64,000 nt of DNA from Octopus sinensis (taxonomy: Eukaryota), in assembly GCF_006345805.1 (NCBI RefSeq), contig NC_043014.1, positions 38,006,001-38,070,000 on the forward strand. The letters run 5' to 3'. Below the pieces are notes generated by a model. That model was not told where the DNA came from. It did no database searches and worked only from the letters and a program-made list of their open reading frames with translations. Of this stretch, positions 1 to 56,770 are shown one piece after another (the first letter of the stretch is position 1; every line of letters starts with the position of its first letter). The position numbers and the translations under genes are program-made.

Positions 1-3000
1 CTATTTATACGTCGTGCATTTCATTGCTTTCATTTTTTGTTGCACGACGAGCTGTCGTTCTTTGTTGACTATTTATACGTCGTGGCATTTCATTGGCTTT
101 AATTTTTTGTTGCACGACGAGCTGTCGTTCTTTGTTGTCTATTTATACGTCGTGCATTTCATTGGCTTTCAATTTTTGTTGCACGACGAGCTGTCGTTCT
201 TTGTTGACTATTTATACGTCGTGCATTTCATTGGCTTTCTTTTTGTTGCACGACGAGCTGTCGTTCTTTGTTGACTATTTATACGTCGTGCATTCATTGG
301 CTTTCATTTTTGTTGCACGACGAGCTGTCGTTCTTTGTTGACTATTTATACGTCGTGCATTTCATTGGCTTTCATTTTCTGTTGCACGACGAGCTGTCGT
401 TCTTTTGACTATTTATACGTCGTGCATTTCATTGGCTTTCATTTTTTGTTGCACGACGAGCTGTCGTTCTTTGTTGACTATTTATACGTCGTGCATTTCA
501 TTGGCTTTCATTTTTTGTTGCAAGACGAGCTGTCGTTCTTTGTTGACTATTTATACGTCGTGCATTTCATTGGCTTTCATTTTTGTTGCACGACGAGCTG
601 TCGTTCTTTGTTGACTATTTATACGCGTGCATTTCATGGCTTTCATTTTCTGTTGCACGACGAGCTGTCGTTCTTTGTTGACTATTTATACGTCGTGCAT
701 TTCATTGGCTTTCATTTCTGTTGCACGACGAGCCTGGTCGTTCTTTGTTGACTATTTATACGTCGTGCATTTCATGGCTTTCATTTTGTTGCACGACGAG
801 CTGTCGTTCTTTGTTGACTATTTATACGTCGTGCATTTCATTGGCTTTAATTTTTGTTGCACGACGAGCTGTCGTTCTTTGTGACTATTTATACGTTCGT
901 GCATTTCATTGGCTTTCATTTTTTGTTGCACGACGAGTGTCGTTCTTTGTTGACTATTTTACGTCGTGCATTTCATTGGCTTTCATTTTCTGTTGCACGA
1001 CGAGCTGTCGTTCTTTGTTGACTATTATACGTCGTGCATTTATGGCTTTCATTTTCTGTTGCACGACGAGCTGTCGTTCTTTGTTGACTATTTATACGTC
1101 GTGCATTTCATTGGCTTTCATTTCTGTTGCACGACGAGCTGTCGTCTTTGTTGACTATTTATACGTCGTGCATTTCATGGCTTTCATTTTTTGTTGCACG
1201 ACGAGCTGTCGTTCTTTGTTGACTATTTATACGTCGTCCATTTCATTGGCTTCATTTTTTGTTGCACGACGAGCTGTCGTTCTTTGTTGACTATTTATAC
1301 TCGTGATTTCATGGCTTTCATTTTTTGTTGCACGACGAGCTGTCGTTCTTTGTTGACTATTTATACGTCGTGCATTTCATTGGCTTTCATTTTTTGTTGC
1401 ACGACGAGCTGTCGTTCTTTGTTGACTATTTATACGTCGTGCATTTCATTGGCTTTCATTTTTTGTTGCACGACGAGCTGTCGTTCTTTGTTGACTATTT
1501 ATACGTCGTGCATTTCATTGGCTTTCATTTTTTGTTGCACGACGAGCGCTCTTTGTTGACTATTTATACGTCGTGCATTTCATTGGCTTTCATTTTTGTT
1601 GCACGACGAGCTGTCGTTCTTTGTTGACTATTTATACGTCGTGCATTTCATTGGCTTTCATTTTCTGTTGCACGACGAGCTGTCGTTCTTTGTTGACTAT
1701 TTATACGTCGTGCATTTCATTGGCTTTCATTTTCTGTTGTACGACGAGCTGTCGTTCTTTGTTGACTATTTATACGTCGTGCATTTCATTGGCTTTCATT
1801 TTTTGTTGCACGACGAGCTGTCGTTCTTTGTTGACTATTTATACGTCGTGCATTTCATTGGCTTTCATTTTCTGTTGCACGACGAGCTGTCGTTCTTTGT
1901 TGACTATTTATACGTCGTGCATTTCATTGGCTTTCATTTTTTGTTGCACGACGAGCTGTCGTTCTTTGTTGACTATTTATACGTCGTGCATTTCATTGGC
2001 TTTCATTTTCTGTTGCACGACGAGCTTGTCGTTCTTTGTTGATATTTATACGTCGTGCATTTCATTGGCTTTATTTTTTGTTGCACGACGAGCTGTCGTT
2101 CTTTGTTGGCTATTTATACGTCGTGCATTTCATTGGCTTTCATTTTTGTTGCACGACGAGCTGTCGTTCTTTGTTGACTATTTATACGTCGTGCTTCATT
2201 GGCTTTCATTTTTTGTTGCACGACGAGCTGTCGTTTTTGTTGACTATTATACGTCGTGCATTTCATGGCTTTCATTTTTGTTGCACGACGACGAGCTGTC
2301 GTTCTTTGTGACTATTTATTACGTCGTGCATTTCATTGGCTTTCATTTTTTGTTGCACGACGAGCTGTCGTTCTTGTTGACTATTTATACGTCGTGCATT
2401 TCATTGGCTTTCATTTTCTGTTGCACGACGAGCTGTCGTTCTTTGTTGACTATTTATACGTCGTGCATTTCATTGGCTTTCATTTTTTGTTGCACGACGA
2501 GCTGTCGTTCTTTGTTGACTATTTATACGTCGTGCTTTCATTGGCTTTCATTTTTGTTGCACGACGAGCTGTCGTTCTTTGTTGACTATTATACGTCGTT
2601 GCATTTCATTGGCTTTAATTTTTGTTGCACGACGAGCTGTCGTTCTTTGTTGACTATTTATACGTCGTGCATTTCATTGGCTTTAATTTTTTGTTGCACG
2701 ACGAGCTGTCGTTCTTTGTTGACTATTTATACGTCGTGCATTTCATTGGCTTTCATTTTTTGTTGCACGACGAGCTGTCGTTCTTTGTTGACTATTTATA
2801 CGTCGTGCATTTCATTGGCTTTCATTTTCTGTTGCACGACGAGCTGTCGTTCTTTGTTGACTATTTATACGTCGTGCATTTCATTGGCTTTCATTTTTTG
2901 TTGCACGACGAGCTGTCGTTCTTTGTTGACTATTTATACGTCGTGCATTTCATTGGCTTTCATTTTTTGTTGCACGACGAGCTGTCGTTCTTTGTTGACT

Positions 3001-6000
3001 ATTATACGTCGTGCATTTCATTGGCTTCTTTTTTTTTGTTGCACGACGAGCTGTCGTTCTTTGTTGACTATTTATACGTCGTGCATTTCATTGGCTTTCA
3101 TTTTTGTTGCACGACGAGCTGTCGTTCTTTGTTGACTATTTATACGTCGTGCATTTCATTGGCTTTCATTTTTGTTGTTGCACGACGAGCTGTCGTTCTT
3201 TGTTGACTATTATTACGTCGTGCATTCATGGCTTTCATTTTTCGTTGCACGACGAGCTGTCGTTCTTTGTTGAATATTTATACGTCGTGCATTTCATTGG
3301 CTTTCATTTTTGTTGCACGACGAGCTGTCGTTCTTTGTTGACTATTTATACGTCGTGCATTTCATTGGCTTTAATTTTTTGTTGCACGACGAGCTGTCGT
3401 TCTTGTTGACTATTTATCGTCGTGCATTTCATTGGCTTTCATTTTTTGTTGCACGACGAGCTGTCGTTCTTTGTTGACTATTTATACGTCGTGCATTTCA
3501 TTGGCTTTCATTTTCTGTTGCACGACGAGCTGTCGTTCTTTGTTGACTATTTATACGTCATGCATTTCATTGGCTTTCATTTTTGTTGCACGACGAGTGT
3601 CGTTCTTTGTTGACTATTTATACGTCGTGGATTTATTGGCTTTTTTTTTGTTGCACGACGAGCTGTCGTTCTTTGTTGACTATTTATACGTCGTGCATTT
3701 CATTGGCTTTCATTTTTTGTTGCACGACGAGCTGTCGTTCTTTGTTGACTATTTATACGTCGTGCATTTCATTGGCTTCATTTTCTGTTGCACGACGAGC
3801 TGTCGTTCTTTGTGACTATTTATACGTCGTGCATTTCATTGGCTTTAATTTTTTGTTGCAGACGAGCTGTCGTTCTTTGTTGACTATTTATACGTCGTGC
3901 ATTTCATTGGCTTTCATTTTTTGTTTCACGACGAGCTGTCGTCTTTGTTGACTATTTATACGTCGTGCATTCATTGGCTTTCATTTTCTGTTGCACGACG
4001 AGCTGTCGTTCTTTGTTGACTATTTATACGTCATCCATTTCATTGGCTTCATTTTTTGTTGCACGACGAGCTGTCGTTCTTTGTTGACTATTTATACGTC
4101 GTGCATTTCATTGGCTTTCATTTTTTGTTGCACGACGAGCTGTCGTTCTTTGTTGACTATTTATACGTCGTGCATTCATTGGCTTTCATTTTTTGTTGCA
4201 CGACGAGCTGTCGTTCTTTGTTGACTATTTATACGTCGTGCATTTCATTGGCTTTCATTTTTTGTTGCACGACGAGCTGTCGTTCTTTGTTGACTATTAT
4301 ACGTCGTGCATTTCATTGGCTTTCATTTTCTGTTGCACGACGAGCTGTCGTTCTTTGTTGACTATTTATACGTCATGATTTCATTGGCTTTCATTTTTGT
4401 TGCACGACGAGCTGTCGTTCTTTGTTGACTATTTATACGTCGTGCATTTCATTGGCTTTCATTTTTTGTTGCACGACGAGCTGTCGTTCTTTGTTGACTA
4501 TTTATACGTCGTGCATTTCATTGGCTTTCATTTTTTGTTGCACGACGAGCTGTCTTTCTTTTTGTTGACTATTTATACGTCGTGCATTTCATTGGCTTTA
4601 ATTTTTGTTGCACGACGAGCTGTCGTTCTTTGTTGACTATTTATACGTCGTGCATTTCATTGGCTTTCATTTTTGTTGCACGACGAGCTGTCGTTCTTTG
4701 TTGACTATTTATACGTCGTGCATCCTTCATTGGCTTTCATTTTCTGTTGCACGACGAGCTGTCGTTCTTTGTTGACTATTTATACGTCATGCGTTTCATT
4801 GGCTTTCATTTTTTGTTGCACGGCGAGCTGTCGTTCTTTGTTGACTATTTATACGTCGTGCATTTCATTGGCTTTCATTTTTTGTTGCACGACGAGCTGT
4901 CGTTCTTGTTGACTATTTATACGTCGTGCATTTCATTGGCTTTCATTTTTTGTTGCACGACGCTGTCGTTCTTTGTTGACTATTTATACGTCGTGCATTC
5001 ATTGGCTTTCATTTTTTGTTGCACGACGAGCTGTCGTTCTTGTTGACTATTTATACGTCGTGCATTTCAATTGGCTTTCATTTTCTGTTGCACGACGAGC
5101 TGTCGTTCTTTGTTGACTATTTATACGTCATGCATTTCATTGGCTTTCATTTTTTGTTGCACGACGAGCTGTCGTTCTTTGTTGACTATTTATACGTCGT
5201 GCATTTCATTGGCTTTCATTTTTGTTGCACGACGAGCTGTCGTTCTTTGTTGACTATTTATACGTCGTGCATTTCATTGGCTTTCATTTTTGTTGCACGA
5301 CGAGCTGTCGTTCTTTGTTGACTATTTATACGTCGTGCATTTCATTGGCTTTCATTTTTTGTTGCACGACGAGCTGTCGTTCTTTGTTGACTATTTATAC
5401 GTCGTGCATTTCATTGGCTTTCATTTTTTGTTGCACGACGAGCTGTCGTTCTTTGTTGACTATTTATACGTCGTGCATTTCATGGCTTTCATTTTTTGTT
5501 GCACGACGAGCTGTCGTTCTTTGTTGACTATTTATACGTCGTGCATTTCATTGGCTTTCATTTTCTGATGCACGACGAGCTGTCGTTCTTTGTTGACTAT
5601 TTATACGTCGTGCATTTCATTGGCTTTCATTTTTTGTTGCACGACGAGCTGTCGTTCTGTTGACTATTTGTACGTCGTGCATTTCATTGGCTTTCATTTT
5701 TTGTTGCACGACGAGCTGTCGTTCTTTGTTGACTATTTATACGTCGTGCATTTCATTGGCTTTCATTTTTTGTTGCACGACGAGCTGTCGTTCTTTGTTG
5801 ACTATTTATACGTCGTGCATTTCATTGGCTTTCATTTTCTGTTGCACGACGAGCTGTCGTCTTTGTTGACTATTTATACGTCGTGCATTCATTGGCTTTA
5901 ATTTTTTGTTGCACGACGATTGTCGTTCTTTGTTGACTATTTATACGTCGTGCATTTCTTGGCTTTCATTTTTTGTTGCACGACGAGCTGTCGTTCTTGT

Positions 6001-9000
6001 TGACTATTTATACGTCGTGCATTTAATTGGCTTTCATTTTTTGTTGCACGACGAGCTGTCGTTCTTTGTTGACTATTTTATACGTCGTGCATTTCATTGG
6101 CTTTCTTTTTTGTTGCACGACGAGCTGTCGTTCTTTGTTGACTATTTATACGTCGTGCATTTCATTGGCTTTCATTTTCTGTTGCACGACGAGCTGTCGT
6201 TCTTTGTTGACTATTTATACGTCGTGCATTTCATTGGCTTTCATTTTTGTTGCACGACGAGCTGTCGTTCTTTGTTGACTATTTATACGTCGTGCATTTC
6301 ATTGGCTTTCATTTTTGTTGCACGACGAGCTGTCGTTCTTTGTTGACTATTTATACGTCGTGCATTTCATTGGCTTTCATTTTCTGTTGCACGACGAGCT
6401 GTCGTTCTTTGTTGACTATTTATACGTCGTGCATTTCATTGGCTTTCATTTTTGTTGCACGACGAGCTGTCGTTCTTTGTTGACTATTTATACGTCGTGC
6501 ATTTCATGGCTTTCATTTCTGTTGCACGACGAGCTGTCGTTCTTTGTTGACTATTTATACGTCGGCATTTCATTGGCTTTCATTTTCTGTTGCACGACGA
6601 GCTGTCGTTCTTAGTGACTATTTATACGTCGTGCATTTCATGGCTTTCATTTTTTGTTGCACGACGAGCTGTCGTTCTTTGTTGACTATTTATACGTCGT
6701 GCATTTCATTGGCTTTCATTTTTTGTTGCACGATGAACTGTCGTTCTTTGTTGACTATTTATACGTCGTGCATTTCATTGGCTTTCATTTTTTTGTTGCA
6801 CGACGAGCTGTCGTTCTTTGTTGACTATTTATACGTCGTGCATTTCATTGGCTTTCATTTTTTGTTGCACGACGAGCTGTCGTTCTTTGTGACTATTTAT
6901 ACGTCGTGCATTTCATTGGCTTTCATTTTTTGTTGCACGACGAGCTGTCGTTCTTTGTTGACTATTTATACGTCGTGCATTTCATTGGCTTTCATTTTTT
7001 GTTGCACGACGAGCTGTCGTTCTTTGTTGACTATTTATACGTCGTGCATTTCATTGGCTTTCATTTTTGTTGTTGCACGACGAGCTGTCGTTCTTTGTTG
7101 ACTATTTATACGTCGTTGCATTTCATTGGCTTTCATTTTTGTTGCACGACGAGCTGTCGTTCTTTGTTGACTATTTATACGTCGTGGCATTTCATTGGCT
7201 TTCATTTTCTGTTGCACGACGAGCTGTCGTTCTTTGTTGACTATTTATACGTCGTGCATTTCATTGGCTTTCATTTTTGTTGCACGACGAGTTGTCGTTC
7301 TTTGTTGACTATTTATACGTCGTGGCATTTCATTGGCTTTCATTTTTTGTTGCACGACGAGCTGTCGTTCTTTGTTGACTATTTAACGTCGTGCATTTCA
7401 TTGGCTTTCATTTTTGTTGCACGACGAGCTGTCGTTCTTTGTTGACTATTTATACGTCGTGCATTTCATTGGCTTTCATTTTTTGTTGCACGACGAGCTG
7501 TCGTTCTTTGTTGACTATTTATACGTCGTGCATTTCATTGGCTTTCATTTTTGTTGCACGACGAGCTGTCGTTCTTTGTGGACTATTTATACGTCGTGCA
7601 TTTCATTGGCTTTCATTTTTTGTTGCACGACGAGCTGTCGTTCTTTGTTGGCTATTTATACGTCGTGCATTTCATTGGCTTTCATTTTTTGTTGCACGAC
7701 GAGCTGTCGTTCTTTGTTGACTATTTATACGTCGTGCATTTCATTGGCTTTCATTTTTGGTTGCACGACGAGCTGTCGTTCTTTGTTGACTATTATACGT
7801 CGTGCATTTCATTGGCTTTCATTTTCTTGCACGACGAGCTGTCGTTCTTTGTTGACTTATTTATACGTCATGCATTTCATTGGCTTTATTTTTTGTTGCA
7901 GACGAGCTGTCGTTCTTTGTTGACTATTATACGTCGTGCATTTCATTGGCTTTCATTTTTTGTTGCACGACGAGCTGTCGTTCTTTGTTGACTATTTATA
8001 CGTCGTGCATTTCATTGGCTTTCATTTTTTGTTGCACGACGAGCTGTCGTTCTTTGTTGACTATTATACGTCGTGCATTTCATTGGCTTTCATTTTTTGT
8101 TGCACGACGAGCTGTCGTTCTTTGTTGACTATTTATACGTCGTGCATTTCATTGGCTTTCATTTTTTGTTGCACGACGAGCTGTCGTTCTTTGTTGACTA
8201 TTTATACGTCGTGCATTTCATTGGCTTTCAGTTTTTGTTGCACGACGAGCTGTCGTTCTTTGTTGACTATTTATACGTCGTGCATTTCATTGGCTTTCAT
8301 TTTTTGTTGCACGACGAGCTGTCGTTCTTTGTTGACTATTTATACGTCGTGCATTTCATTGGCTTTCATTTTTTGTTGCACGACGAGCTGTCGTTCTTTG
8401 TTGACTATTTATACGTCGTGCATTTCATTGGCTTTCATTTTTTGTTGCACGACGAGCTGTCGTTCTTTGTTGACTATTTATACGTCGTGCATTTCATTGG
8501 CTTTCATTTTTCGTTGCACGACGAGCTGTCGTTCTTTGTTGACTATTTATACGTCGTGCATTTCATTGGCTTTCATTTTTTGTTGCACGACGAGCTGTCG
8601 TTTTTTTGACTATTTATACGTCGTGCATTTCATTGGCTTTAATTTTTTGTTGCACGACGAGCTGTCGTTCTTTGTTGACTATTTATACGTCGTGCATTTC
8701 ATTGGCTTTCATTTTTTGTTGCACGACGAGCTGTCGTTCTTGTTGACTATTATACGTCGTGCATTTCATTGGCTTTCATTTTCTGTTGCACGACGAGCTG
8801 TCGTTCTTTGTTGACTATTTATACGTCATGCATTTCATTGGCTTTCATTTTGTGTTGCACGACGAGCTGTCGTTCTTTGTTGACTATTTATACGTCGTGC
8901 ATTTCATTGGCTTTCATTTTTGTTGCACGACGAGCTGTCGTTCTTTGTTGACTATTTATACGTCGTGCATTTCATTGGCTTTCATTTTTTGTTGCACGAC

Positions 9001-12000
9001 GAGCTGTCGTTCTTTGTTGACTATTTATACGTCGTGCATTTCATTGGCTTTCATTTTCTGGTGCACGACGAGCTGTCGTTCTTTGTTGACTATTTATACG
9101 TCGTGCATTTCATTGGCTTTAATTTTTGTTGCACGACGAGCTGTCGTTCTTTGTTGACTATTTATACGTCGTGCATTTCATTGGCTTTCATTTTTTGTTG
9201 CACGACGAGCTGTCGTTCTTTGTTGACTATTTATACGTCGTGCATTTCATTGGCTTTCATTTTCTGTTGCACGACGAGCTGTCGTTCTTTGTTGACTATT
9301 ATACGTCATCCATTTCATTGGCTTTCATTTTTTGTTGCACGACGAGCTGTCGTTCTTTGTTGACTATTTATACGTCGTGCATTTCATTGGCTTTCATTTT
9401 TTGTTGCACGACGAGCTGTCGTTCTTTGTTGACTATTTATACGTCGTGCATTTCATTGGCTTTCATTTTTGTTGCACGACGAGCTGTCGTTCTTTGTTGA
9501 CTATTTATACGTCGTGCATTTCATTGGCTTTCATTTTTGTTGCACGACGAGCTGTCGTTCTTTGTTGACTATTTATACGTCGTGCATTTCATTGGCTTTC
9601 ATTTTCTGTTGCACGACGAGCTGTCGTTCTGTTGACTATTTATACGTCATGCATTTCATTGGCTTTCATTTTTTGTTGCACGACGAGCTGTCGTTCTTTG
9701 TTGACTATTTATACGTCGTGCATTTCATTGGCTTTCATTTTTTGTTGCACGACGAGCTGTCGTTTTTGTTGACTATTTATACGTCGTGCATTTCATTGGC
9801 TTTCATTTTTTGTTGCACGACGAGCTGTCTTTCTTTGTTGACTATTTATACGTCGTGCATTTCATTGGCTTTAATTTTTGTTGCACGACGAGCTGTCGTT
9901 CTTTTTGTGACTATTTATACGTCGTGCATTTCATTGGCTTTCATTTTTTGTTGCACGACGAGCTGTCGTTCTTTGTTGACTATTTATACGTCGTGCATTT
10001 CATTGGCTTTCATTTTCTGTTGCACGACGAGCTGTCGTTCTTTGTTGACTATTTATACGTCATGCGTTTCATTGGCTTTCATTTTGTTGCACGGCGAGCT
10101 GTCGTTCTTTGTGACTATTTATACGTCGTGCATTTCATTGGCTTTCATTTTTTGTTGCACGACGAGCTGTCGTTCTTTGTTGACTATTTATACGTCGTGC
10201 ATTTCATTGGCTTTCATTTTTTGTTGCACGACGAGCTGTCGTTCTTTGTTGACTATTTATACGTCGTGCATTTCATTGGCTTTCATTTTTGTTGCACGAC
10301 GAGCTGTCGTTCTTTGTTGACTATTTATACGTCGTGCATTTCATTGGCTTTCATTTTCTGTTGCACGACGAGCTGTCGTTCTTTGTTGACTATTTATACG
10401 TCATGCATTTCATTGGCTTTCATTTTTTGTTGCACGACGAGCTGTCGTTTTTGTTGACTATTTATACGTCGTGCATTTCATTGGCTTTCATTTTTTTTTG
10501 CACGACGAGCTGTCGTTCTTTGTTGACTATTATATACGTCGTGCATTTCATTGGCTTTCATTTTTTGTTGCACGACGAGCTGTCGTTCTTTGTTGACTAT
10601 TTATACGTCGTGCATTTCATTGGCTTTCATTTTTTGTTGCACGACGAGCTGTCGTTCTTTGTTGACTATTTATACGTCGTGCATTTCATTGGCTTTCATT
10701 TTTTTTTGCACGACGAGCTGTCGTTCTTTGTTGACTATTTATACGTCGTGCATTTCATTGGCTTTCATTTTTTGTTGCACGACGAGCTGTCGTTCTTTTG
10801 TGGACTATTTATACGTCGTGCATTTCATTGGCTTTCATTTTCTGATGCACGACGAGCTGTGTCGTTCTTTGTTGACTATTTATACGTCGTGCATTTCATT
10901 GGCTTTCATTTTTGTTGCACGACGAGCTGTCGTTCTTTGTTGACTATTTATACGTCATGCATTTCATTGGCTTTCATTTTTTGTTGCACACGACGAGCTG
11001 TCGTTCTTTGTTGACTATTTATACGTCGTGCATTTCATTGGCTTTCATTTTTTGTTGCACGACGAGCTGTCGTTCTTTGTTGACTATTTATACGTCGTGC
11101 ATTTCATTGGCTTTCATTTTCTGTTGCACGACGAGCTGTCGTTCTTTGTTGACTATTTATACGTCGTGCATTTCATTGGCTTTAATTTTTTGTTGCACGA
11201 CGAGTTGTCGTTCTTTGTTGACTATTTATACGTCGTGCATTTCATTGGCTTTCATTTTTGTTGCACGACGAGCTGTCGTTCTTTGTTGACTATTTTACGT
11301 CGGCATTTAATTGGCTTTCATTTTTGTTGCACGACGAGCTGTCGTTCTTTGTTGACTATTTATACGTCGTGCATTTCATTGGCTTTCATTTTTTGTTGCA
11401 CGACGAGCTGTCGTTCTTTGTTGACTATTTATACGTCGTGCATTTCATTGGCTTTCATTTCTGGTTGCACGACGAGCTGTCGTTCTTTGTTGACTATTTA
11501 TACGTCGTGCATTTCATTGGCTTTCATTTTTTGTTGCACGACGAGCTGTCGTTCTTTGTTGACTATTTATACGTCGTGCATTTCATTGGCTTTATTGGCT
11601 TTCATTTTTTGTTGCACGACGAGCTGTCGTTCTTTGTTGACTATTTATACGTCGTGCATTTCATTGGCTTTTTCATTTTCTGTTGCACGACGAGCTGTCG
11701 TTCTTTGTTGACTATTTATACGTCGTGCATTTCATTGGCTTTCATTTTTGTTGCACGACGAGCTGTCGTTCTTTGTTGACTATTTATACGTCGTGCATTT
11801 CATTGGCTTTCATTTTCTGTTGCACGACGAGCTGTCGTTCTTTGTTGACTATTTATACGTCGTGCATTTCATTGGCTTTCATTTTCTGTTGCACGACGAG
11901 CTGTCGTTCTTTGTTGACTATTTATACGTCGTGCATTTCATTGGCTTTCATTTTTTGTTGCACGACGAGCTGTCGTTCTTTGTTGACTATTTATACGTCG

Positions 12001-14880
12001 TGCATTTCATTGGCTTTCATTTTTTGTTGCACGATGAACTGTCGTTCTTTGTTGACTATTTATACGTCGTGCATTTCATTGGCTTTCATTTTTTGTTGCA
12101 CGACGAGCTGTCGTTCTTTGTTGACTATTTATACGTCGTGCATTTCATTGGCTTTCATTTTTTGTTGCACGACGAGCTGTCGTTCTTTGTTGACTATTTA
12201 TACGTCGTGCATTTCATTGGCTTTCATTTTTTGTTGCACGACGAGCTGTCGTTCTTTGTTGACTATTTATACGTCGTGCATTTCATTGGCTTTCATTTTT
12301 TGTTGCACGACGAGCTGTCGTTCTTTGTTGACTATTTATACGTCGTGCATTTCATTGGCTTCATTTTTTTGTTGCACGACGAGCTGTCGTTCTTTGTTGA
12401 CTATTTATACGTCGTGCATTTCATTGGCTTTCATTTTTTGTTGCACGACGAGCTGTCGTTCTTTGTTGACTATTTATACGTCGTGCATTTCATTGGCTTT
12501 CATTTTCTGTTGCACGACGAGCTGTCGTTCTTTGTTGACTATTTATACGTCGTGCATTTCATTGGCTTTCATTTTTTGTTGCACGACGAGTTGTCGTTCT
12601 TTGTTGACTATTTATACGTCGTGCATTTCATTGGCTTTCATTTTTTGTTGCACGACGAGCTGTCGTTCTTTGTTGACTATTTATACGTCGTGCATTTCAT
12701 TGGCTTTCATTTTTTGTTGCACGACGAGCTGTCGTTCTTTGTTGACTATTTATACGTCGTGCATTTCATTGGCTTTCATTTTTTGTTGCACGACGAGCTG
12801 TCGTTCTTTGTTGACTATTTATACGTCGTGCATTTCATTGGCTTTCATTTTTGTTGCACGACGAGCTGTCGTTCTTTGTTGACTATTTATACGTCGTGCA
12901 TTTCATTGGCTTTCATTTTTTGTTGCACGACGAGCTGTCGTTCTTTGTTGGCTATTTATACGTCGTGCATTTCATTGGCTTTCATTTTTTGTTGCACGAC
13001 GAGCTGTCGTTCTTTGTTGACTATTTATACGTCGTGCATTTCATTGGCTTTCATTTTTTGTGCACGACGAGCTGTCGTTCTTTGTTGACTATTTATACGT
13101 CGTGCATTTCATTGGCTTTGGCTTTCATTTTTTCTTGCACGACGAGCTGTCGTTCTTTGTTGACTATTTATACGTCATGCATTTCATTGGCTTTCATTTT
13201 TTGTTGCACGACGAGCTGTCCTTCTTTGTTGACTATTTATACGTCGTGCTTTCATTGGCTTTCATTTTTTGTTGCACGACGAGCTGTCGTTCTTTGTTGA
13301 CTATTTATACGTCGTGCATTTCATTGGCTTTCATTTTTTGTTGCACGACGAGCTGTCGTTCTTTGTTGACTATTTTACGTCGTGCATTTCATTGGCTTTC
13401 ATTTTTTGTTGCACGACGAGCTGTCGTTCTTTGTTGACTATTTATACGTCGTGCATTTCATTGGCTTTCATTTTTTGTTGCACGACGAGCTGTCGTTCTT
13501 TGTTGACTATTTATACGTCGTGCATTTCATTGGCTTTCAGTTTTTGTTGCACGACGAGCTGTCGTTCTTTGTTGACTATTTATACGTCGTGCATTTCATT
13601 GGCTTTCATTTTTGTTGCACGACGAGCTGTCGTTCTTTGTTGACTATTTATACGTCGTGCATTTCATTGGCTTTCATTTTTTGTTGCACGACGAGCTGTC
13701 GTTCTTTGTTGACTATTTATACGTCGTGCATTTCATTGGCTTTCATTTTTTGTTGCACGACGAGCTGTCGTTCTTTGTTGACTATTTATACGTCGTGCAT
13801 TTCATTGGCTTTCATTTTTTGTTGCACGACGAGCTGTCGTTCTTGTTGACTATTTATACGTCATGCATTTCATTGGCTTTCATTTTTTGTTGCACGACGA
13901 GCTGTCGTTCTTTGTTGACTATTTATACGTCGTGCATTTCATTGGCTTTCATTTTCTGTTGCACGACGAGCTGTCGTTCTTTGTTGACTATTTATACGTC
14001 GTGCATTTCATTGGCTTTCATTTTTTGTTGCACGACGAGCTGTCGTTCTTTGTTGACTATTTATACGTCGTGCATTTCATTGGCTTTCATTTTTTGTTGC
14101 ACGACGAGCTGTCGTTCTTTGTTGACTATTTATACGTCGTGCATTTCATTGGCTTTAATTTTTTGTTGCACGACGAGCTGTCGTTCTTTGTTGACTATTT
14201 ATACGTCGTGCATTTCATTGGCTTTCATTTTTTGTTGCACGACGAGCTGTCGTTCTTTGTTGACTATTTATACGTCGTGCATTTCATTGGCTTTATTTTT
14301 TGTTGCACGACGAGCTGTCGTTCTTTGTTGACTATTTATACGTCGTGCATTTCATTGGCTTTAATTTTTTGTTGCACGACGAGCTGTCGTTCTTTGTTGA
14401 CTATTTATACGTCGTGCATTTCATTGGCTTTCATTTTTTGTTGCACGACGAGCTGTCGTTCTTTGTTGACTATTTATACGTCGTGCATTTCATTGGCTTT
14501 CATTTTTTGTTGCACGACGAGCTGTCGTTCTTGTTGACTATTTATATGTCGTGCATTTCATGGCTTTCATTTTTTGTTGCACGACGAGCTGTCGTTCTTT
14601 GTTGACTATTTATACGTCGTGCATTTCATTGGCTTTCATTTTCTGTTGCACGACGAGCTGTCGTTCTTTGTTGACTATTTATACGTCATGCATTTCATTG
14701 GCTTTCATTTTTTGTTGCACGACGAGCTGTCGTTCTTTGTTGACTATTTATACGTCGTGCATTTCATTGGCTTTCATTTTCTGTTGCACGACGAGCTGTC
14801 GTTCTTTGTTGACTATTTATACGTCGTGCATTTCATTGGCTTTCATTTTCTGTTGCACGACGAGCTGTCGTTCTTTGTTG
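1..14880. repeat. 69-bp tandem satellite array, ~215 monomers, continues past the left edge of the window
   Basis: Consensus ctatttatacgtcgtgcatttcattggctttcattttttgttgcacgacgagctgtcgttctttgttga (69 nt) repeats without interruption. Variation is mostly 1-nt indels in T runs plus a few recurrent substitutions (tttttt/ttttct, gtcgtg/gtcatg). Confidence 0.99.
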
Positions 14881-15761
14881 GCTATCTACACGTCGTGCAA
14901 TTCGTTGACTTTCATTTTCTGTTGCACGACGAGCTGCCGTTTTTTGTTGGCTATCTACACGCCGTGCATTTCTTTGGCTTTTATTTTCTGTTGCCTGAAG
15001 AGCTGTTGGCTATCTACACCGTGCATTTGTTTGGCATTCATTTTCTGTTGCACCATGAACTGCCGTTGTTTGTTGTCTATCTACACGTCGTGCATTTCTT
15101 TGGCTTTCATTTCTGTTGCACGACGTGAGGCCGTTTTTGTTGGCTAACTACACGTCCTGCATTTCTTGATTCTCATTTTTTGTTTCACGATGACTGCCGT
15201 TGTTTGTTGGCTATCTTCGCGACGTACATTTCTTTGGCTTTCATTTCCTGTTGCACGATGACCAGCCGTTTTTTTTTGTTGGCTATCTACACGTCGTGCT
15301 TTTCATTGGCTTCCATTTTTTGTTGCACGACGAGGTTGGCTATCTTCACGTTGTGCATTTCTTTGGCTTTCATTTTCTGTTGCATGACTAGCTGCCGTTT
15401 TGTTGGCTATCTACATGTCGTGCATTTTTTTTGACTTTCATTTTCCGCTGCACGACGAGCTGTCGTACTTTGTTGGCTATCTACACGTCGTCATTTCTCT
15501 TATCTTCGATTTCTGCTGCACGACGAGCTGCCGTTCTCTGTGCATTTCTTCGACCTTCGTTTTCCGCTGCGCGTGGAGCTGCCACTCTTTCTTTCCTGGT
15601 TGCATTTCGTGCATTTCTTTGATGTTCGGTTGCAGATGTACATCGAACCTTCTTTCTTTGTCGATCATCTAACAGCCGTTCGCGTTTCTTATCTTCGTTT
15701 TCTGCTGCACGTCGTGAGTTTCTTTGGTGTTCGTGTTTTGATGCTCTTTTTTAGGAGACAT
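14881..15761 (-). pseudogene. Diverged satellite edge = frameshifted ORF of 23-aa STPR-like basic repeats (possibly the N-terminus of a Helitron RepHel protein)
   Basis: Manual translation from ATG at 15761, with one A added in the A6 run: MSPKKRASKHEHQRNSRRAA-ENEDKKRERLLDDRQRKKVRCTS-ATEHQRNARNATRKERVAAPRAA-ENEGRRNAQRTAARRAA-EIEDKRN..., then ENESQRNARRVDSQQ(K/R)TAARRAT-type units. Several indels are in frame (3, 12, 18 nt, and a compensating 10+2 nt pair). Confidence 0.7.
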
Positions 15762-15829
15762 TTTTTGATAAGAAATATCAGTATGTAGTAGTCAAATGAA
15801 ATTACAAATGCTTATCTTGTCAGTGTTAG

Positions 15830-16040
15830 AGCTGAATTTTTGACGCTATATATACAGGAATGCAAGGCAAGGCGTTGTGTGATAGAGAAGTTGGAATGCA
15901 ATCTTGGGATATTATCTTGATGTTTCTGACATCTCTTTTTATCATACCCAGGGCGCCCACAATAACAGGAACAGCTCTCGCTTTAAGATGCCACATCTTT
16001 TGTATTTCAATTTCCAGATCCTTATTTGGGTGTGTCAATT
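15830..16040 (-). mobile_element. R4/Dong-clade non-LTR retrotransposon, C-terminal restriction-like endonuclease fragment
   Basis: KDLEIEIQKMWHLKARAVPVIVGALGMIK matches the C-terminal motif of R4/Dong ORFs. A related fragment lies at 55790-56232. Confidence 0.6.
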
Positions 16041-22486: not shown

Positions 22487-22568
22487 TGGCAGCGATGGGA
22501 TTCGAACCCACGCCTCCGAAGAGACTGGTGCCTAAAACCAGCGCCTTAGACCACTCGGCCACGCTACC
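22487..22568 (-). tRNA. tRNA-Leu (anticodon TAG), 82 nt
   Basis: GGTAGCGTGGCCGAGTGGTCTAAGGCGCTGGTTTTAGGCACCAGTCTCTTCGGAGGCGTGGGTTCGAATCCCATCGCTGCCA: 7-bp acceptor stem, anticodon stem CTGGT/ACCAG with loop TTTAGGC, long variable arm and TTCGAAT loop. A TTTT Pol III terminator lies just downstream (22476-22479). Confidence 0.97.
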
Positions 22569-28238: not shown

Positions 28239-29672
28239 ATGCCAAGCTTTTTCAGACGTATTAACCGTTTTTATTCATGTCGTTGGAGGACGTGTTACGC
28301 TTGTACTGTAGCTTTAATTCTGCTACAGTCTTTAAGAGTTGATATAAGTATGGCTTTTGTTTGCATGTTGAAAACGCCCAATCGGACAAATAATGAAAAT
28401 AATTTTACACGAACTAACGAACATTGTTCTTCTTTAAACAACCATAAAATAATGCAACATTTTGAAGGTGAGTTTGAATGGAGCAACACGTTACAATCAA
28501 ATATCTTAGCATGTTACTTTTATGGGTATATTTCAACTAATATTTTAGCTGGAATATTGGTAAACAAATATGGTGGGAAAAAAGTTCTAGGAAGCTCACT
28601 TCTCTTCGCATCATTTCTGACCATTCTCCACCCAAGTTTATCTCGAATAAGTGGTTACTTAACAATTGTCCTAAGAATATTAACAGGTATGGTCTCGGCA
28701 CCGATGTTCCCAGCAATCCTATCGCTAATGGCACGTTGGGCCCCACCATCTGAGAAAGACCTATTGATTGGTATTACTTTTACAGGTCAAGTATTGGGCA
28801 ATATTGCAGGTTTTGTAATATTCGGTTACCTTTGTGAGTATGGATTTGATAATGGATGGGGTTCTATATTTTATACAAGTGGTGTAACGACGTTGATTTT
28901 TAGTTTTGTGTGGTATTATGCTGTTTACGATAATCCAGATCTCCATCCTACAATCAGCCAAGAAGAACATGCTTATTTAAACAGAACTATAATATGTGAA
29001 AGACTACCTAAAAATATACCTTGGCGACGGATGCTTTCTTCGCCTGCAATTTGGGCTATTGTTTTCGGTTTGTTTGGTTATGATTGGGGCTCCATTTCCC
29101 TCCAGGTATTGCTGCCTCTGTATTTAAAAGAAGCCTTAAACGTTAATGCAACATCCAACGGTATAATTTCCTCAGCTCCTTCGGTTGCAGAAGTCATTGT
29201 CCTACCATTATGGGGAAAATTGGCCGATATTTTGCGTTCAAAGAATTATATGTCAACTCACTCGGTGCGTGTTTTATTCCAAACCGTTGCTCTAGTTGCT
29301 TGTGCAAGTCTACTGATTACCATGGGATACCTCAGATGTGACCAACTCATTCAAATATATATTTTCTTGTTTCTTTGTGGTGCATTCCTAGCATTTAGCT
29401 GTAGTGGAGTTATTGCCAACAGCATTGACATTGCTCCCAGTTATGTCGGCGTAATCTTTGGACTTACTAACACAATTTGTGCATCATCAGGCAGCTTTTC
29501 TTCCTTGTTCGCAAAAGCTCTGACACCAAATGGCACACAGAGCGAATGGCAGATCGTATTTGCTTTGTATGGCGCTGTTCTTGTCTTAGGTGCAATATTC
29601 TTTGCAGTGTTGGTAAGAACAGAAATTCAAGACTGGGCAAGACCTGAGGGATTCGAACCAGAGGAAGCATGA
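28239..29672 (+). CDS. SLC17 / sialin-like major facilitator anion transporter, 477 aa, intronless ORF
   Basis: Uninterrupted ORF with SLC17 motifs: TM1 LRVDISMAFVCM, FEWS..Q..IL..YFYGY, KYGGK, WAPPxE, FGYDNGWGSIFY-like loop (YGFDNGWGSIFY), VYDNPDLHPTIS.EE, IPWRRMLSSPAIWAI, DIAPSYVGVIFGLTNT, W..VF, C-terminal EIQDWA. About 12 hydrophobic segments. Exact paralog not assignable. Confidence 0.95.
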   Translation: MPSFFRRINRFYSCRWRTCYACTVALILLQSLRVDISMAFVCMLKTPNRTNNENNFTRTNEHCSSLNNHKIMQHFEGEFEWSNTLQSNILACYFYGYISTNILAGILVNKYGGKKVLGSSLLFASFLTILHPSLSRISGYLTIVLRILTGMVSAPMFPAILSLMARWAPPSEKDLLIGITFTGQVLGNIAGFVIFGYLCEYGFDNGWGSIFYTSGVTTLIFSFVWYYAVYDNPDLHPTISQEEHAYLNRTIICERLPKNIPWRRMLSSPAIWAIVFGLFGYDWGSISLQVLLPLYLKEALNVNATSNGIISSAPSVAEVIVLPLWGKLADILRSKNYMSTHSVRVLFQTVALVACASLLITMGYLRCDQLIQIYIFLFLCGAFLAFSCSGVIANSIDIAPSYVGVIFGLTNTICASSGSFSSLFAKALTPNGTQSEWQIVFALYGAVLVLGAIFFAVLVRTEIQDWARPEGFEPEEA

Positions 29673-38287: not shown

Positions 38288-38702
38288 GGCAGCGAGCTGG
38301 CAGAAACGTTAGCACGCCGGGCGAAATGCGTAGCCGTATTTCGTCTGCCGTTATGTTCTGAGTTCAAATTCCGCCGAGGTCGACTTTGCCTTTCCTCCTA
38401 TCGGGGTCGATAAATTAAGTACCAGTTACGCAGTGGGGTCGATATAATCGACTTAATCTGTTTGTCTGTCCTTGTTTGTCCCCTCTGTGTTTAACCCCTT
38501 GTGGGTAGTAAAGAAATAGGAATTTCGTCTGCCGCTACGTTCTGAGTTCAAATTCCGCCGAGGTCGACTTTGCCTTTCATCCTTTCGGGGTCGATAAATT
38601 AAGTACCAGTTACGCACTGGGGTCGATGTAATCGACTTAATCTGTTTGTCTGTCCTTGTTTGTCCCTTCTGTGTTTAGCCCCTTGCGGGTAGTAAAGAAA
38701 TA
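38288..38702 (+). mobile_element. SINE family B (Nin/Deu-like domain), head-to-tail dimer
   Basis: GGCAGCGAGCTGGCAGAAACGTTAGC head; GACTTTGCCTTTCATCCTTTCGGGGTCGATAAATTAAGTACCAG domain occurs twice. Confidence 0.85.
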
Positions 38703-39045
38703 GATAATTAAAGATGACATGAATAGACTGTAATAAACACTTTTTATCCACCGACCTTTTTATCTAAACACATTACGTAGCAACAAATGCTGTACGCATT
38801 TTCCCCTCAGTGACAAAAACATTCAATATCACTGTGACAAAAAACATGAAATAACACGATCACAAGGCGATAACCTTCCCCCAACCAAAACAAAAATATA
38901 CATTTACCCCTCACTAAACACATACATTACTCAATTGAAAATAAATACTATAAAAATCAGGCTAAAAATAGCTAAACCCAAAGAAAAACATAACACTCTT
39001 TACAGTGTGTGTGTGTGTATATATATATACATACATGCATGCATA

Positions 39046-44380: not shown

Positions 44381-44796
44381 ATATCTCTATATATAAAACT
44401 GAAATGCGTTTTTACCGCTTGGATCGCTTTCAATGCCACTACATCTCGTCCGATTCGCTCCAAAATTTACAGGGACATGTAGAATGAAGTGACGAAGCTC
44501 GTGGGCTACCTTAGAAACCCCTATCTTAAAAGGTGTGGTTGCTAGGGGCCATCGTCCTCACTCACGCTATTCCCTCCTTTCCCTCTCTTACTCCCCTTCA
44601 TTATAACTTTGAGAAGTCCACTACGGTTATTTAATGTATTCCCCTCAACTCCCTTTCACTTTCCCTTTATAAGTTCGTCAGGCGGCTTTCTTTGATGTAT
44701 CTGTTTGCATTCATAGGGAGAATTATCGCTACCAACAACACACAATCATGAGAACAAATAGTATGAATCAGATATTCTTGCGTTCATTTATATATC

Positions 44797-50743: not shown

Positions 50744-51590
50744 AAGGCGGCGAGCTGGCAGAAACGTTAGCACGCCGGGCGAAATGCGTAGCCGTATTTC
50801 GTCTGAGTTCAAATTCCGCCGAGGTCGACTTTGCCTTTCATCCTTTCGGGGTCGATTAAATAAGTGTCAGTTACGCACTGGGGTCGATATAATCGACTTA
50901 ATCCGTTTGTCTGTCCTTGTTTGTCCTCTCTGTGTTTAGCCCCTTCTTGGTAGTAAAGAAATAGGCATTTCACCTGTGTTCGACTTTGCTTTTAAGGCAG
51001 CGACCTGGCAGAATCGTTAGCACGCCGGGCGAAATGCTTAGCAGTATTTCGTCTGCCGTTACGTTCTGAGTTCAAATTCCACCGAGGTCGACTTTGACTT
51101 TCATCCATTCCAGGTCGATAAATTAAGTACCAGTTACGCACTGGGGTCGATGTAATCGACTTAATCCGTTTGTCTGTCCTTGTTTGTCCCCTCTAAGTTT
51201 AGCCCCTTGTGGGTAGTAAACACATAAGTATTTTGCCTGCCGTTACGTTCTGAGTTCAAATTCCGCCGATGTCGACTTTGCCTTTCATCCTTTCGGGGTC
51301 GATAAATTAAGTACCAGTTACGCACTGGGGTCGATGTAATCGATTTAATCCGTTTGTCTGTCCTTGTTTGTCCTCTCTATGTTTAGCCCCTTGTGATTAG
51401 TAAAGGAATAGGTATTTCGCCTGCCGCTAGGTTCTGAGTTCAAATTCCGCCGAGGTTGACTTTGCCTTTCATCCTTTCGGGGTCGATAAAACAAGTATCA
51501 TTTCAGTACTGGGGTCGATATAATCGACTGGCCCCCTTTCCCAAATTTCAAGCCTTGTGCCTATAGTAGAAAGAATTATTATTATTATTA
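50744..51590 (+). mobile_element. Tandem array of SINE family B units (four Nin-like domains)
   Basis: GAGTTCAAATTCC.CCGA.GT.GACTTTG begins near 50805, 51068, 51252 and 51436; the array ends in TAGTAGAAAGA(ATT)n. Confidence 0.85.
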
Positions 51591-56444: not shown

Positions 56445-56770
56445 TGGAGGGTCCGGTGAAAGTGAACGGAGTCTGGTTCGGACCAGATCTCCTGGTAGAT
56501 AGGAACTGGAAAGAGGTCATGGGTCATGACTAGAGTGGCCAAGTTCATCCAGAAATGGGCAGAAAGGAAGCTGCCGCTGAAAAGCCGGGCAGAAGTAACG
56601 AATGCATATATCGCATCCGTAGTGTACTACCGCCTAGCTGTCGTACCTTGTTCTAAGAAAACTCTGACCAGATTGGAGCGCTTGCTTTTCCGATTCTTAC
56701 GGAGGGATTCGGTTCCGCTGGTCAGAAAATCCATTTGCTGTCAACACCCACACCGTGGTGGTCTTGGGAT
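56445..56770 (+). mobile_element. Tx1/L1-type LINE fragment (post-RT region)
   Basis: W..RKLPLKSRAEV.N.YI.S..YYRL...P...LERLLFRFL...PLV....CCQHP..GGLGIP. Confidence 0.7.

What the first reader, a model, noticed from the sequence alone, without database searches (positions are those of the whole stretch)
1..15761. A 15-kb satellite built from the coding sequence of a 23-aa STPR-like DNA-binding repeat
Seen: the 69-nt monomer is exactly 23 codons. In the diverged edge (14881-15761) one minus-strand frame reads as a protein starting MSPKK(+1 A)RASK..., followed by in-register 23-aa units (ENEDKKRERLLDDRQRKKVRCTS / ATEHQRNARNATRKERVAAPRAA / ENESQRNARRVDSQQRTAARRAT). Several indels there preserve frame. 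The ORF track misses this frame. Established: STPR (score-and-three peptide repeat) domains of Bombyx FMBP-1 and ZNF821 are tandem 23-aa basic helices that bind DNA. Against the FMBP-1 repeat as I recall it (ETSEERAARLAKMSAYAAQRLAN), the consensus here matches E1, R6, A8, R9, A18, R20 and A22, and the first unit has R9-L10. Inference: one repeat of an STPR-containing gene, most plausibly a Helitron RepHel N-terminus, was amplified over 200-fold into a satellite. The intermediates between gene and satellite are preserved at the edge.
Basis: partly seen in the sequence, partly recalled or inferred. Interest (0 to 1): 0.85.

Follow-up and report, generated by a model that had tools for sequence, protein, structure and literature searches.

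The report
Octopus satellite grown from protein-coding repeat
A 15-kb block of 69-base tandem repeats in an octopus chromosome ends in a short remnant of a gene for a 23-amino-acid DNA-binding repeat (STPR-like), so the satellite probably grew from one coding repeat; the link to a Helitron transposon is not shown.

Summary
The 69-nt array is real: 223.8 copies at window 1-15334, running off the left end. The core (1-14856) is 97-100% uniform. About ten decayed units follow. The outermost 267 nt (15484-15750, minus strand) is an open 89-codon frame made of 69-nt units only 61-67% identical to the monomer.

Evidence for a coding origin is moderate and comes from several directions.
- The monomer has codon-like period-3 composition (GC1/2/3 = .65/.61/.13; 3-10 of 5000 shuffles reach it).
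- The edge frame is more similar to real STPR proteins than any of 2000 shuffles. The best match is P0028, a bona fide Pfam STPRs member.
- The outer units fit the STPR pattern better than the less diverged inner units. Neutral decay simulations rarely reproduce this (p = 0.0005-0.007).

Evidence against family membership is also clear.
- Pfam STPRs is not reached.
- No homolog was found among 1.84 billion proteins.
- No frame shows dN/dS below 1.
- The ATG is out of frame by one base.
- Nothing Helitron-like was seen, and the place to look lies outside the window.

Verdict: the coding-repeat origin is probably right (about 0.6). The Helitron parent is unproven. This is a new variant of the known "repeat inside a gene or transposon becomes a satellite" theme.

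The parts
1..14856 (-). Homogenised core of the 69-nt satellite, about 215 monomers. It continues beyond the left end of the window. In the coding-like frame each monomer reads ATKNESQ*NARRINSQQRTTARR, with an in-frame TGA.
   Evidence: TRF. Per-monomer identity to the core consensus is 0.97-1.00. There are 151 indel events in 209 monomers, of which 148 are 1-2 nt, 1 is 4 nt, and only 3 (3, 6, 9 nt) are multiples of three. They are deletion-biased and enriched in homopolymers.
14857..15519 (-). Ten decayed early-type monomers, 75-96% identical to the ancestral-type unit GCAACAGAAAATGAAAGCCAAAGAAATGCACGACGTGTAGATAGCCAACAAAGAACGGCAGCTCGTCGT (= ATENESQRNARRVDSQQRTAARR). They lack the TGA of the core, but the frame is broken by 1-2-nt indels.
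   Evidence: Wrap-around DNA alignment. Substitutions fall 17/26/13 by codon position and synonymous counts match the neutral expectation. STPR pattern scores are mostly -14 to -33 bits (one unit with a deletion, 15383, scores -6.1), as expected for neutral decay.
15484..15750 (-). Open 89-codon frame with a TAG stop at 15483-15481. It is the putative remnant of an STPR-like coding region. It holds a partial unit (15750-15709), unit u708 (15708-15640, AAENEDKKRERLLDDRQRKKVRC), unit u639 (15639-15571, TSATEHQRNARNATRKERVAAPR), unit u570 (15570-15520, with an 18-nt in-frame deletion, AAENEGRRNAQRTAARR) and the start of the next unit.
   Evidence: Translation. u708 and u639 match the ancestral unit at 42/69 and 46/69 ungapped positions in the array's own register. 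Period-3 statistic G = 29.9, reached by 0/5000 shuffles. BLASTP to P0028 gives 42% identity over 50 aa, 28.5 bits, E = 3e-6 for the pair, reached by 0/2000 shuffles. It is the top tblastn hit of 120 STPR proteins anywhere in the 64-kb window.
15759..15761 (-). ATG proposed as the start (MSPKK...). It is out of frame with the 89-codon frame by one base. The A6 run at 15747-15752 would have to be A7.
   Evidence: Sequence. One-base deletions in homopolymers are very common in this assembly's array: 113 deletions against 18 insertions of 1 nt. The shift is therefore plausible as an error or decay, but it is unverified.
15826..16038 (-). 70-codon ORF fragment (…EIQKMWHLKARAVPVIVGALGMIK…) directly upstream of the ATG. 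From memory it resembles the C-terminal end of a retrotransposon ORF. An A-rich stretch follows and ends at the ATG. It may mark an insertion that truncates the 5' side of the coding remnant.
   Evidence: ORF list. No Pfam hit. The retroelement assignment rests on my recollection only.

Best explanation
The region is a large satellite array that is now non-coding. The record appears to be an Octopus sinensis chromosome. The founding monomer of the array was one 23-codon unit of a gene, or transposon ORF, that encoded a divergent STPR-type tandem basic repeat.

Such a coding region is already a tandem 69-nt repeat at the DNA level. Unequal exchange or replication slippage between neighbouring units can therefore expand it. 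This step is inferred.

After the gene died, one variant of the unit was amplified and homogenised over at least 215 copies. That variant carries an AGA>TGA stop plus four or five further diagnostic changes (GTA>ATA, GAT>AAT, GCC>GTC, GGC>GAC, and in most copies GAA>AAA). This is shown in the sequence.

Array edges escape homogenisation, so older states survive there. First come about ten neutrally decayed early monomers. At the very end come about four much more diverged units that still read as an open STPR-like frame next to a possible start codon. This is shown.

The array itself does nothing as a protein. Any present role would be that of ordinary satellite DNA.
For: (1) Array anatomy and a divergence gradient toward the boundary.

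(2) Codon-like phase composition of the 69-nt unit. GC by phase is .65/.61/.13, and seven of the eight T fall in one phase. G = 24.0 is reached by 10/5000 mononucleotide and 3/5000 dinucleotide shuffles. The AT-rich phase is the third position of the only open minus-strand frame. There is no short sub-repeat; the best lag gives 27/69 matches and lag 3 gives only 23/69. The signal is therefore not a degenerate trinucleotide repeat.

(3) The edge frame against real STPR proteins. The best BLASTP score is 28.5 bits (composition-adjusted) or 43.5 bits (raw), against shuffle means of 18.6 and 31.5. None of 1000 column permutations and none of 1000 residue shuffles reach it. The pairwise E-value is 3e-6. 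The partner P0028 scores 41.4 bits on Pfam STPRs over residues 22-85, which includes the aligned residues 27-76.

(4) All four of our units choose the same register against a 23-column STPR matrix built from 57 real units. The joint column-permutation count is 25/5000.

(5) Two regimes at the edge. The outer units are 33-39% diverged in DNA yet score -4.2, -7.5 and -7.9 bits. Most inner units are 4-25% diverged yet score -14 to -33 bits. The ancestral unit scores -11.8 and the core unit -20.4. Simulated neutral decay of the ancestral unit to the same divergence gives -32 +/- 10 bits, with p = 10/5000 and 33/5000. With the real mutation mask rotated, p = 0.0005 and 0.007.

(6) The unit length of 23 aa equals the most common STPR spacing, seen in 60 of 127 spacings in real proteins.
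Against: - Pfam STPRs is not reached by the real frame. The idealised unit gets 10.5 bits against a cut-off of 27.
- Absolute pattern scores of our units are negative, while real units score +21 to +53 bits.
- L10 and L21, conserved in real STPR units, are R in the monomer. Only the outermost unit has R9-L10.
- phmmer of the 89-aa frame against 1.84 billion representatives gives nothing at E<=1e-3. The word-indexed search of 5.8 billion proteins also gives nothing.
- Substitutions show no third-position excess (14/14/16). Synonymous counts equal the neutral expectation in every frame.
- The consensus monomer itself is not significantly STPR-like (31/300 and 77/300; 1122/5000).
- With a sharp HMM built from real units nothing exceeds the shuffles.
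- The set of 120 STPR proteins was fished with a profile in which one of six rows was our own consensus unit. This could bias the comparison slightly, although the aligned part of the frame is not that unit.
- The hypothesis was formed after looking at the sequence.
Confidence: 0.6

Rival explanations
1. This is an ordinary satellite with no coding ancestry. The A-rich strand happens to translate into an Arg/Glu/Gln/Ala/Asn-rich peptide. The 69-nt length, the open edge frame and the faint STPR resemblance are coincidences noticed after the fact. The edge is just the usual non-homogenised, decayed array boundary.
For: - No Pfam hit, no homolog in two very large protein searches, and no dN/dS signal.
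- Three of six frames are open in the ancestral unit and two plus-strand frames stay open for hundreds of codons. Openness of the edge frame has P about 0.17.
- Shuffled 5x units produce many spurious Pfam hits.
- The divergence gradient is what any array edge shows.
- The monomer carries a 9-bp inverted repeat, TGCACGACG/CGTCGTGCA, typical of satellites (DNA fold z = -2.3).
Against: - The period-3 composition is unlikely for non-coding DNA (3-10 of 5000 shuffles) and there is no sub-repeat to explain it.
- The BLASTP score to real STPR proteins is never reached by 2000 shuffles that preserve composition or periodicity.
- The most diverged units are the most STPR-like, the opposite of what neutral decay predicts.
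Confidence: 0.32
2. The parent was the STPR-bearing 5' ORF of a canonical Helitron (HLE1). Rep and PIF1-helicase remnants lie beyond the array on the minus strand, to the left of the window.
For: - HELIANO reports Pfam STPRs as one of 20 domains stably carried by Helitron-like elements, almost exclusively by HLE1, within 4 kb of RepHel. Molluscs are among HLE1 hosts (PMC11417382).
- The STPR-like frame sits at the N-terminal end next to a candidate ATG, as in P0028, where the domain starts at residue 22.
Against: - Nothing Helitron-like was detected in the window.
- The 65 nt between the ATG and a retroelement-like fragment show no recognisable 5'-TC terminus (by eye).
- The two informative STPR loci fetched from other genomes, L002 and L004, have no Helitron_like_N or PIF1 gene within 9-10 kb.
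- STPR domains also occur in host genes such as FMBP-1 and ZNF821 (Pfam description; established knowledge).
Confidence: 0.2
3. The array is still a protein-coding gene for a giant repeat protein.
For: Long open frames exist on the plus strand, up to 520 codons.
Against: - The plus-strand frames switch constantly through 1-nt indels, encode hydrophobic low-complexity strings, and have no homolog.
- The minus-strand frame has a TGA in every core monomer.
- 148 of 151 indels in the core are 1-2 nt and only 3 are multiples of three.
Confidence: 0.02

Closest known systems
STPR domain (score-and-three-peptide repeat; Pfam PF21107; Bombyx FMBP-1, human ZNF821, and ORFs carried by Helitrons)
   Same: - Tandem 23-residue basic units.
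- The same register of conserved charged positions: E1, Q/E5, R6, A8, R9, R16 and R20 in STPR numbering.
- The outermost unit has R9-L10.
- Significant local similarity to a bona fide member, P0028, inside its STPRs domain.
   Different: - Below the Pfam threshold.
- Conserved L10, L21 and E4 are mostly absent.
- Pattern scores are negative against +21 to +53 bits for real units.
- The sequence is a dead remnant with a frameshift between the ATG and the frame and a stop after 89 codons.
Satellite or tandem-repeat arrays born from repeats inside transposable elements, for example satDNA-like repeats carried by Helentrons in Crassostrea gigas (PMC7492417, PMC8268682; review PMC6947457)
   Same: - A short internal tandem repeat of a mobile element or gene expands into a long homogenised array.
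- The host is a mollusc.
- There is a possible link to rolling-circle transposons.
   Different: - In the oyster the repeats are non-coding central repeats of non-autonomous elements and form many short dispersed arrays.
- Here the founding unit appears to be protein-coding sequence (23 codons of a DNA-binding repeat), the array is one block of at least 15 kb, and the transition zone is preserved.
- No element termini were found.
Classical satellite DNA arrays with non-homogenised edges
   Same: Head-to-tail monomers at 97-100% identity, a divergence gradient at the boundary, dyad symmetry in the monomer and transposon fragments at the flank.
   Different: The monomer has codon-like phase composition, and the outermost units keep a protein-like pattern instead of decaying.

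Membership tests
STPR domain (Pfam PF21107) | Score at or above the Pfam gathering threshold (27 bits) | tested here: not met
   The real 93-aa and 233-aa translations get no STPRs hit at E<=10. The idealised 5x unit gets 10.5 bits, E = 0.89. Shuffled 5x units get unrelated hits as strong as E = 7.5e-9, so this level carries no weight.
STPR domain (Pfam PF21107) | Tandem units of 23 residues | tested here: met
   The 69-nt period runs throughout. The two outermost full units are exactly 23 codons in the open frame. 23 is the most common spacing in real STPR proteins, 60 of 127.
STPR domain (Pfam PF21107) | Conserved positions of the unit. In 57 real units: E1 100%, E4 88%, R6 100%, R9 100%, L10 95%, R20 82%, A22 74% | tested here: inconclusive
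   - R6, R9 and R20 are kept in most of our units, and E1 in three of four.
- L10 is present only in the outermost unit. E4 and L21 are absent.
- The joint register test gives p = 0.005, but absolute scores are -4 to -12 bits.
STPR domain (Pfam PF21107) | Significant sequence similarity to an accepted member within its domain | tested here: met
   P0028 scores 41.4 bits on Pfam STPRs over residues 22-85. It aligns to the edge frame at 42% identity over 50 aa with pair E = 3e-6. As the best of 120 it scores 28.5 bits, reached by 0/2000 shuffles. Caveat: the set of 120 was retrieved with a profile that included our consensus unit as one of six rows.
STPR domain (Pfam PF21107) | Sequence-specific DNA binding by the repeat helix | not testable with these tools
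   This needs a binding assay with the peptide.
Helitron (HLE1) RepHel element | HUH Rep domain (Helitron_like_N) and PIF1-type helicase in the same element | not testable with these tools
   They would lie downstream on the minus strand, to the left of window position 1. The flank could not be fetched. Nothing of the kind is seen in the window's ORFs.
Helitron (HLE1) RepHel element | 5'-TC and CTRR-3' termini with a 3' hairpin | not tested
   Only 65 nt separate the ATG from a retroelement-like fragment. No terminus is obvious by eye. No formal search was run.
Satellite DNA | Long head-to-tail array of near-identical monomers, non-coding, with diverged edges | tested here: met
   223.8 copies at 95% matches. 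The core is 97-100% identical. Every core monomer has a TGA in the coding-like frame and frameshifts are frequent. The edge gradient is shown.

The most novel reading that the evidence does not exclude
A preserved gene-to-satellite transition. One 23-codon unit of the STPR DNA-binding domain of a Helitron-borne ORF was amplified more than 200-fold into a chromosomal satellite. The original N-terminus and sister repeats still sit at the array edge, and Rep/helicase remnants lie at the other end. This would be the first satellite traced to the coding repeats of a DNA-binding domain. It would also raise the testable idea that STPR proteins made by related elements recognise the array.
Probability: 0.18. 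Interest if true: 0.65.

Novelty: new variant of a known kind. Interest (0 to 1): 0.5.

Why it matters
Satellites are known to arise from tandem repeats inside transposons, but the founding unit is almost always non-coding and the transition has almost always been erased. Here the founding unit seems to be 23 codons of a DNA-binding repeat, and the old coding units survive at the array boundary. That gives a rare dated series from gene, through early monomers, to a homogenised core. Such a series can be used to study how arrays start and how homogenisation spreads. It also shows that protein domains built from exact-length tandem repeats are a latent source of satellite DNA. If the evidence does not hold up, this is an ordinary octopus satellite.

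Tried and rejected
- **Protein searches.** Pfam on the real and idealised translations was not significant. The PDB sequence search gave only a chance hit to a mitoribosomal protein at E = 0.075. The search with the frame-corrected 238 aa found nothing. Exhaustive phmmer of the 89-aa frame against 1.84 billion proteins found nothing.
- **Protein search with a 446-aa plus-strand satellite ORF, meant to find other arrays.** It found nothing and used the last search.
- **Attempts to reach DNA left of the window.** Satellite ORFs and a 143-aa ORF are not called genes in that record. The other end of the array was therefore not seen.
- **Metagenome scan for the monomer.** No matches.
- **HMMs built from real STPR units.** The first run of the softened model failed silently because of an option clash and is discarded. 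The sharp model shows no signal above shuffles, and the softened one only p = 0.01-0.06.
- **dN/dS-type counts in three frames.** No signal.
- **Helitron domains next to STPR ORFs in other genomes.** L002 and L004 have none, and L003 is cut by the contig end.
- **Trinucleotide-microsatellite origin of the period-3 signal.** Rejected, because there is no excess at lag 3 itself and no sub-repeat.
- **A present-day coding function.** Rejected.
- **Literature search for a described octopus satellite.** Nothing relevant.
Full report
**1. What is there**

TRF reports a single 69-nt array from window 1 to 15334. It has 223.8 copies, 95% matches and a score of 27697. The array starts at the first base of the window, so its true length is unknown.

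The minus strand is A-rich and T-poor (A .458, T .147). I cut the minus strand into monomers at a conserved anchor. This gave 223 units of mostly 69 nt (115 units), 68 nt (53) or 67 nt (23).

Identity to the core consensus is 0.97-1.00 from about 14856 leftward. It falls steeply toward the right boundary.

A look-up of the intronless MFS transporter ORF at 28239-29672 places the window on NCBI GCA_006345805.1, record CM016876.1 (55.35 Mb), at about 38.006-38.070 Mb. From memory that assembly is Octopus sinensis; the tool does not name the organism.

**2. Anatomy of the edge**

I aligned 15760-14857 (minus strand) to a tandem of the ancestral-type unit, GCAACAGAAAATGAAAGCCAAAGAAATGCACGACGTGTAGATAGCCAACAAAGAACGGCAGCTCGTCGT. 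Reading outside to inside, the alignment gives:
- a poorly aligned 51-nt partial unit;
- two units of exactly 69 nt (15708-15640 and 15639-15571) that match the unit at only 42/69 and 46/69 ungapped positions;
- a 51-nt unit with one 18-nt deletion;
- ten units of 68, 68, 57, 72, 68, 67, 68, 57, 69 and 69 nt, at 75-96% identity;
- the core.

The ATG at 15761 is in another frame. It joins the open frame only if the A6 run at 15752-15747 is read as A7.

Inward of 15519 the frame is broken repeatedly. Every core monomer has a TGA in this frame (ATKNESQ*NARRINSQQRTTARR).

Two plus-strand frames are open for up to 520 codons. Open frames are therefore cheap in this composition.

**3. Is the open edge frame more than chance?**

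Openness by itself is not. With the observed 44 substitutions of the three outer units placed at random, 1.7 stops are expected, so P(none) = 0.165. Substitutions fall 14/14/16 on the three codon positions. Synonymous counts equal the neutral expectation in all three frames. The same holds for the ten middle units.

**4. Period-3 composition**

Seven of its eight T are at position 3. The phase-by-base statistic G = 24.0 is reached by 10/5000 mononucleotide and 3/5000 dinucleotide shuffles. For the 267-nt edge frame G = 29.9, reached by 0/5000 shuffles.

Only 4 of 518 non-genic 267-nt windows in the rest of the window reach 29.9. Two are ATT/ATA microsatellites and two lie in an odd GC-rich block near 42.5 kb. 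The true MFS gene reaches at most 23.9.

The unit has no short sub-repeat. The best lag gives 27/69 matches and lag 3 gives 23/69. A degenerate trinucleotide repeat therefore does not explain the signal. The AT-rich phase is the third position of the one open minus-strand frame, as expected for coding sequence in an AT-rich genome.

**5. Is it STPR?**

*Direct family tests fail.* hmmscan finds no STPRs hit on the real translations. It gives 10.5 bits (cut-off 27, E = 0.89) on an idealised 5x unit. Sixty column-shuffled 5x units produce 59 different spurious Pfam families, some at E = 7.5e-9. That score therefore means nothing. The two large protein searches find no homolog.

*Building a comparison set.* I fished with a small profile made of our unit plus five STPR-like units written from memory. 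It returned 163 proteins, almost all carrying a precomputed PF21107 annotation. Their unit consensus is ETPEQREARLQQMREYQRERLAA.

*Results against this real set:*
- A sharp HMM shows nothing above shuffles. A softened HMM puts the edge frame at 19.6 bits against 15.1 +/- 2.1 for shuffles (13/500). Real members score 37-60 bits.
- A 23-column matrix from 57 real units gives our units -4 to -12 bits, against +21 to +53 for real units. All four of our units pick the same register, and the joint column-permutation count is 25/5000.
- BLASTP of the real 89-aa frame against the 120 proteins gives a best hit, P0028, at 28.5 bits composition-adjusted or 43.5 bits raw. It is reached by 0/1000 periodicity-preserving column permutations and 0/1000 residue shuffles. 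The reversed sequence scores 22.3.
- The pairwise alignment is RRAAENEDKKRERLLDDRQRKKVRC... against RRAAETVEQRSERLRKQRQRDCARC..., with 21/50 identities and E = 3e-6.
- P0028 is a proper Pfam STPRs member at 41.4 bits, and its domain (22-85) contains the aligned stretch.
- In a blind tblastn of all 120 proteins against the whole window, the top hit falls at 15714-15577 on the minus strand. Four more of the top 25 hits fall on the same frame.
- The consensus monomer alone is not significantly STPR-like.

**6. Direction of evolution**

STPR pattern scores along the edge are as follows:

| Unit(s) | Score (bits) |
|---|---|
| Three outermost units | -4.2, -7.5, -7.9 |
| Ten middle units | mostly -14 to -33 (one unit with a deletion: -6.1) |
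| Ancestral-type consensus | -11.8 |
| Core unit | -20.4 |

The units most diverged in DNA are thus the most protein-like. The less diverged middle units behave like neutral decay.

Mutating the ancestral unit at random to the same divergence, and keeping only stop-free outcomes, gives -32 +/- 10 bits. The observed values are reached in 10/5000 and 33/5000 runs. Keeping the real, patchy mutation mask but rotating it gives p = 0.0005 and 0.007. Keeping the positions and shuffling only the replacement bases gives 61/2669 and 139/2225.

This fits a model in which the outer units are sister repeats of a former coding region rather than old satellite monomers.

**7. Helitron?**

The HELIANO paper lists Pfam STPRs among 20 domains stably carried by Helitron-like elements, almost only by canonical Helitrons and within 4 kb of RepHel. 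It lists molluscs among the hosts (PMC11417382).

For this locus nothing could be tested. Rep and helicase would lie beyond the left end of the window. The record's ORFs are not indexed, so the flank could not be fetched. No window ORF has such domains.

STPR ORFs fetched from two other genomes have no Helitron genes within 9-10 kb. A third locus is cut by a contig end.

Immediately upstream of the ATG lies a 70-codon ORF fragment that I recognise, from memory only, as a retrotransposon C-terminus. It has no Pfam hit. An A-rich stretch ending at the ATG follows it, so the ATG may be fortuitous.

**8. Mechanism**

*Shown:* a homogenised core carrying an in-frame stop, a zone of decayed early monomers, and an outer zone that is open, period-3 structured and STPR-similar.

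*Inferred:* the coding region was already a 69-nt tandem repeat, so unequal exchange or slippage could expand it. After loss of function one variant was amplified and homogenised, and the edge escaped homogenisation.

In the core, 148 of 151 indels are 1-2 nt. One-base deletions outnumber one-base insertions 113 to 18 and cluster in homopolymers. This looks like long-read assembly error or slippage. It makes a one-base discrepancy in the A-run near the ATG unremarkable.

**9. Verdict**

- The coding-repeat origin with STPR affinity is the best explanation, at about 0.6.
- A plain satellite with a chance resemblance remains a serious rival, at about 0.3.
- The Helitron parent is a reasonable but untested guess, at about 0.2.
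- Formal STPR membership is not established, because the Pfam threshold is not met.
- In kind this is a new variant of the known route from internal tandem repeats of genes or transposons to satellites (PMC6947457, PMC7492417, PMC8268682). Its unusual features are that the founding unit is coding and the transition zone survives.

Noticed in passing
window 15826-16038 (-): A 70-codon ORF fragment (…DLEIEIQKMWHLKARAVPVIVGALGMIKRDV…) lies directly upstream of the candidate ATG and is followed by an A-rich stretch ending at 15761. From memory it looks like the C-terminal end of a retrotransposon ORF. It has no Pfam hit. It may have inserted into the 5' side of the coding remnant.
   Followed up: partly
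window 28239-29672 (+): An intronless 477-aa MFS transporter ORF (MFS_1, 150 bits) is the only clear host gene in the window. It places the window on GCA_006345805.1 CM016876.1 at about 38.03 Mb.
   Followed up: yes
window 22487-22568 (-): Rfam tRNA match at 58.7 bits. Whether it is a real tRNA gene or a SINE head was not resolved.
   Followed up: no
window 38338-38703 and 51043-51529: The same 184-nt unit occurs in tandem at two places: 2.0 copies at 95% and 2.6 copies at 89%. It looks like a SINE-type dispersed repeat that tends to duplicate in tandem. It has no Rfam hit.
   Followed up: no
window 42001-44000: A GC-rich block (GC .536) has very strong G-over-C skew (+0.55). Its period-3 signal is as strong as that of the satellite edge. 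An adjacent 135-aa ORF at 44056-44463 (-) has no Pfam hit. The block is unexplained.
   Followed up: no
window 56741-57388 (-): Reverse-transcriptase fragment (RVT_1, 52 bits) inside a strongly T-rich stretch at 56-60 kb.
   Followed up: no
window 1-14856, every monomer: Each monomer carries a 9-bp inverted repeat, TGCACGACG ... CGTCGTGCA. A two-monomer single-stranded DNA fold gives z = -2.3. In the coding-like frame the two arms are the codons for A-R-R and R-R-A.
   Followed up: partly
window 1-14856: One-base deletions outnumber one-base insertions 113 to 18. 57% of deletion events start in homopolymer runs of 3 or more, which make up 26% of positions. Identity to the consensus drifts from .987 near 14 kb to .972 near the left end. 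This is probably long-read assembly error inside the array. The only common substitution polymorphism is G/A at monomer position 7 (39 of 209 monomers).
   Followed up: partly
L002 8720-8944 (-), 10001-10357 (+), 17421-17690 (-): In the unidentified ENA assembly that holds P0028, three separate STPR-type ORFs lie within 20 kb in both orientations, with no Rep/helicase nearby. STPR-coding fragments behave there as dispersed repeats.
   Followed up: partly
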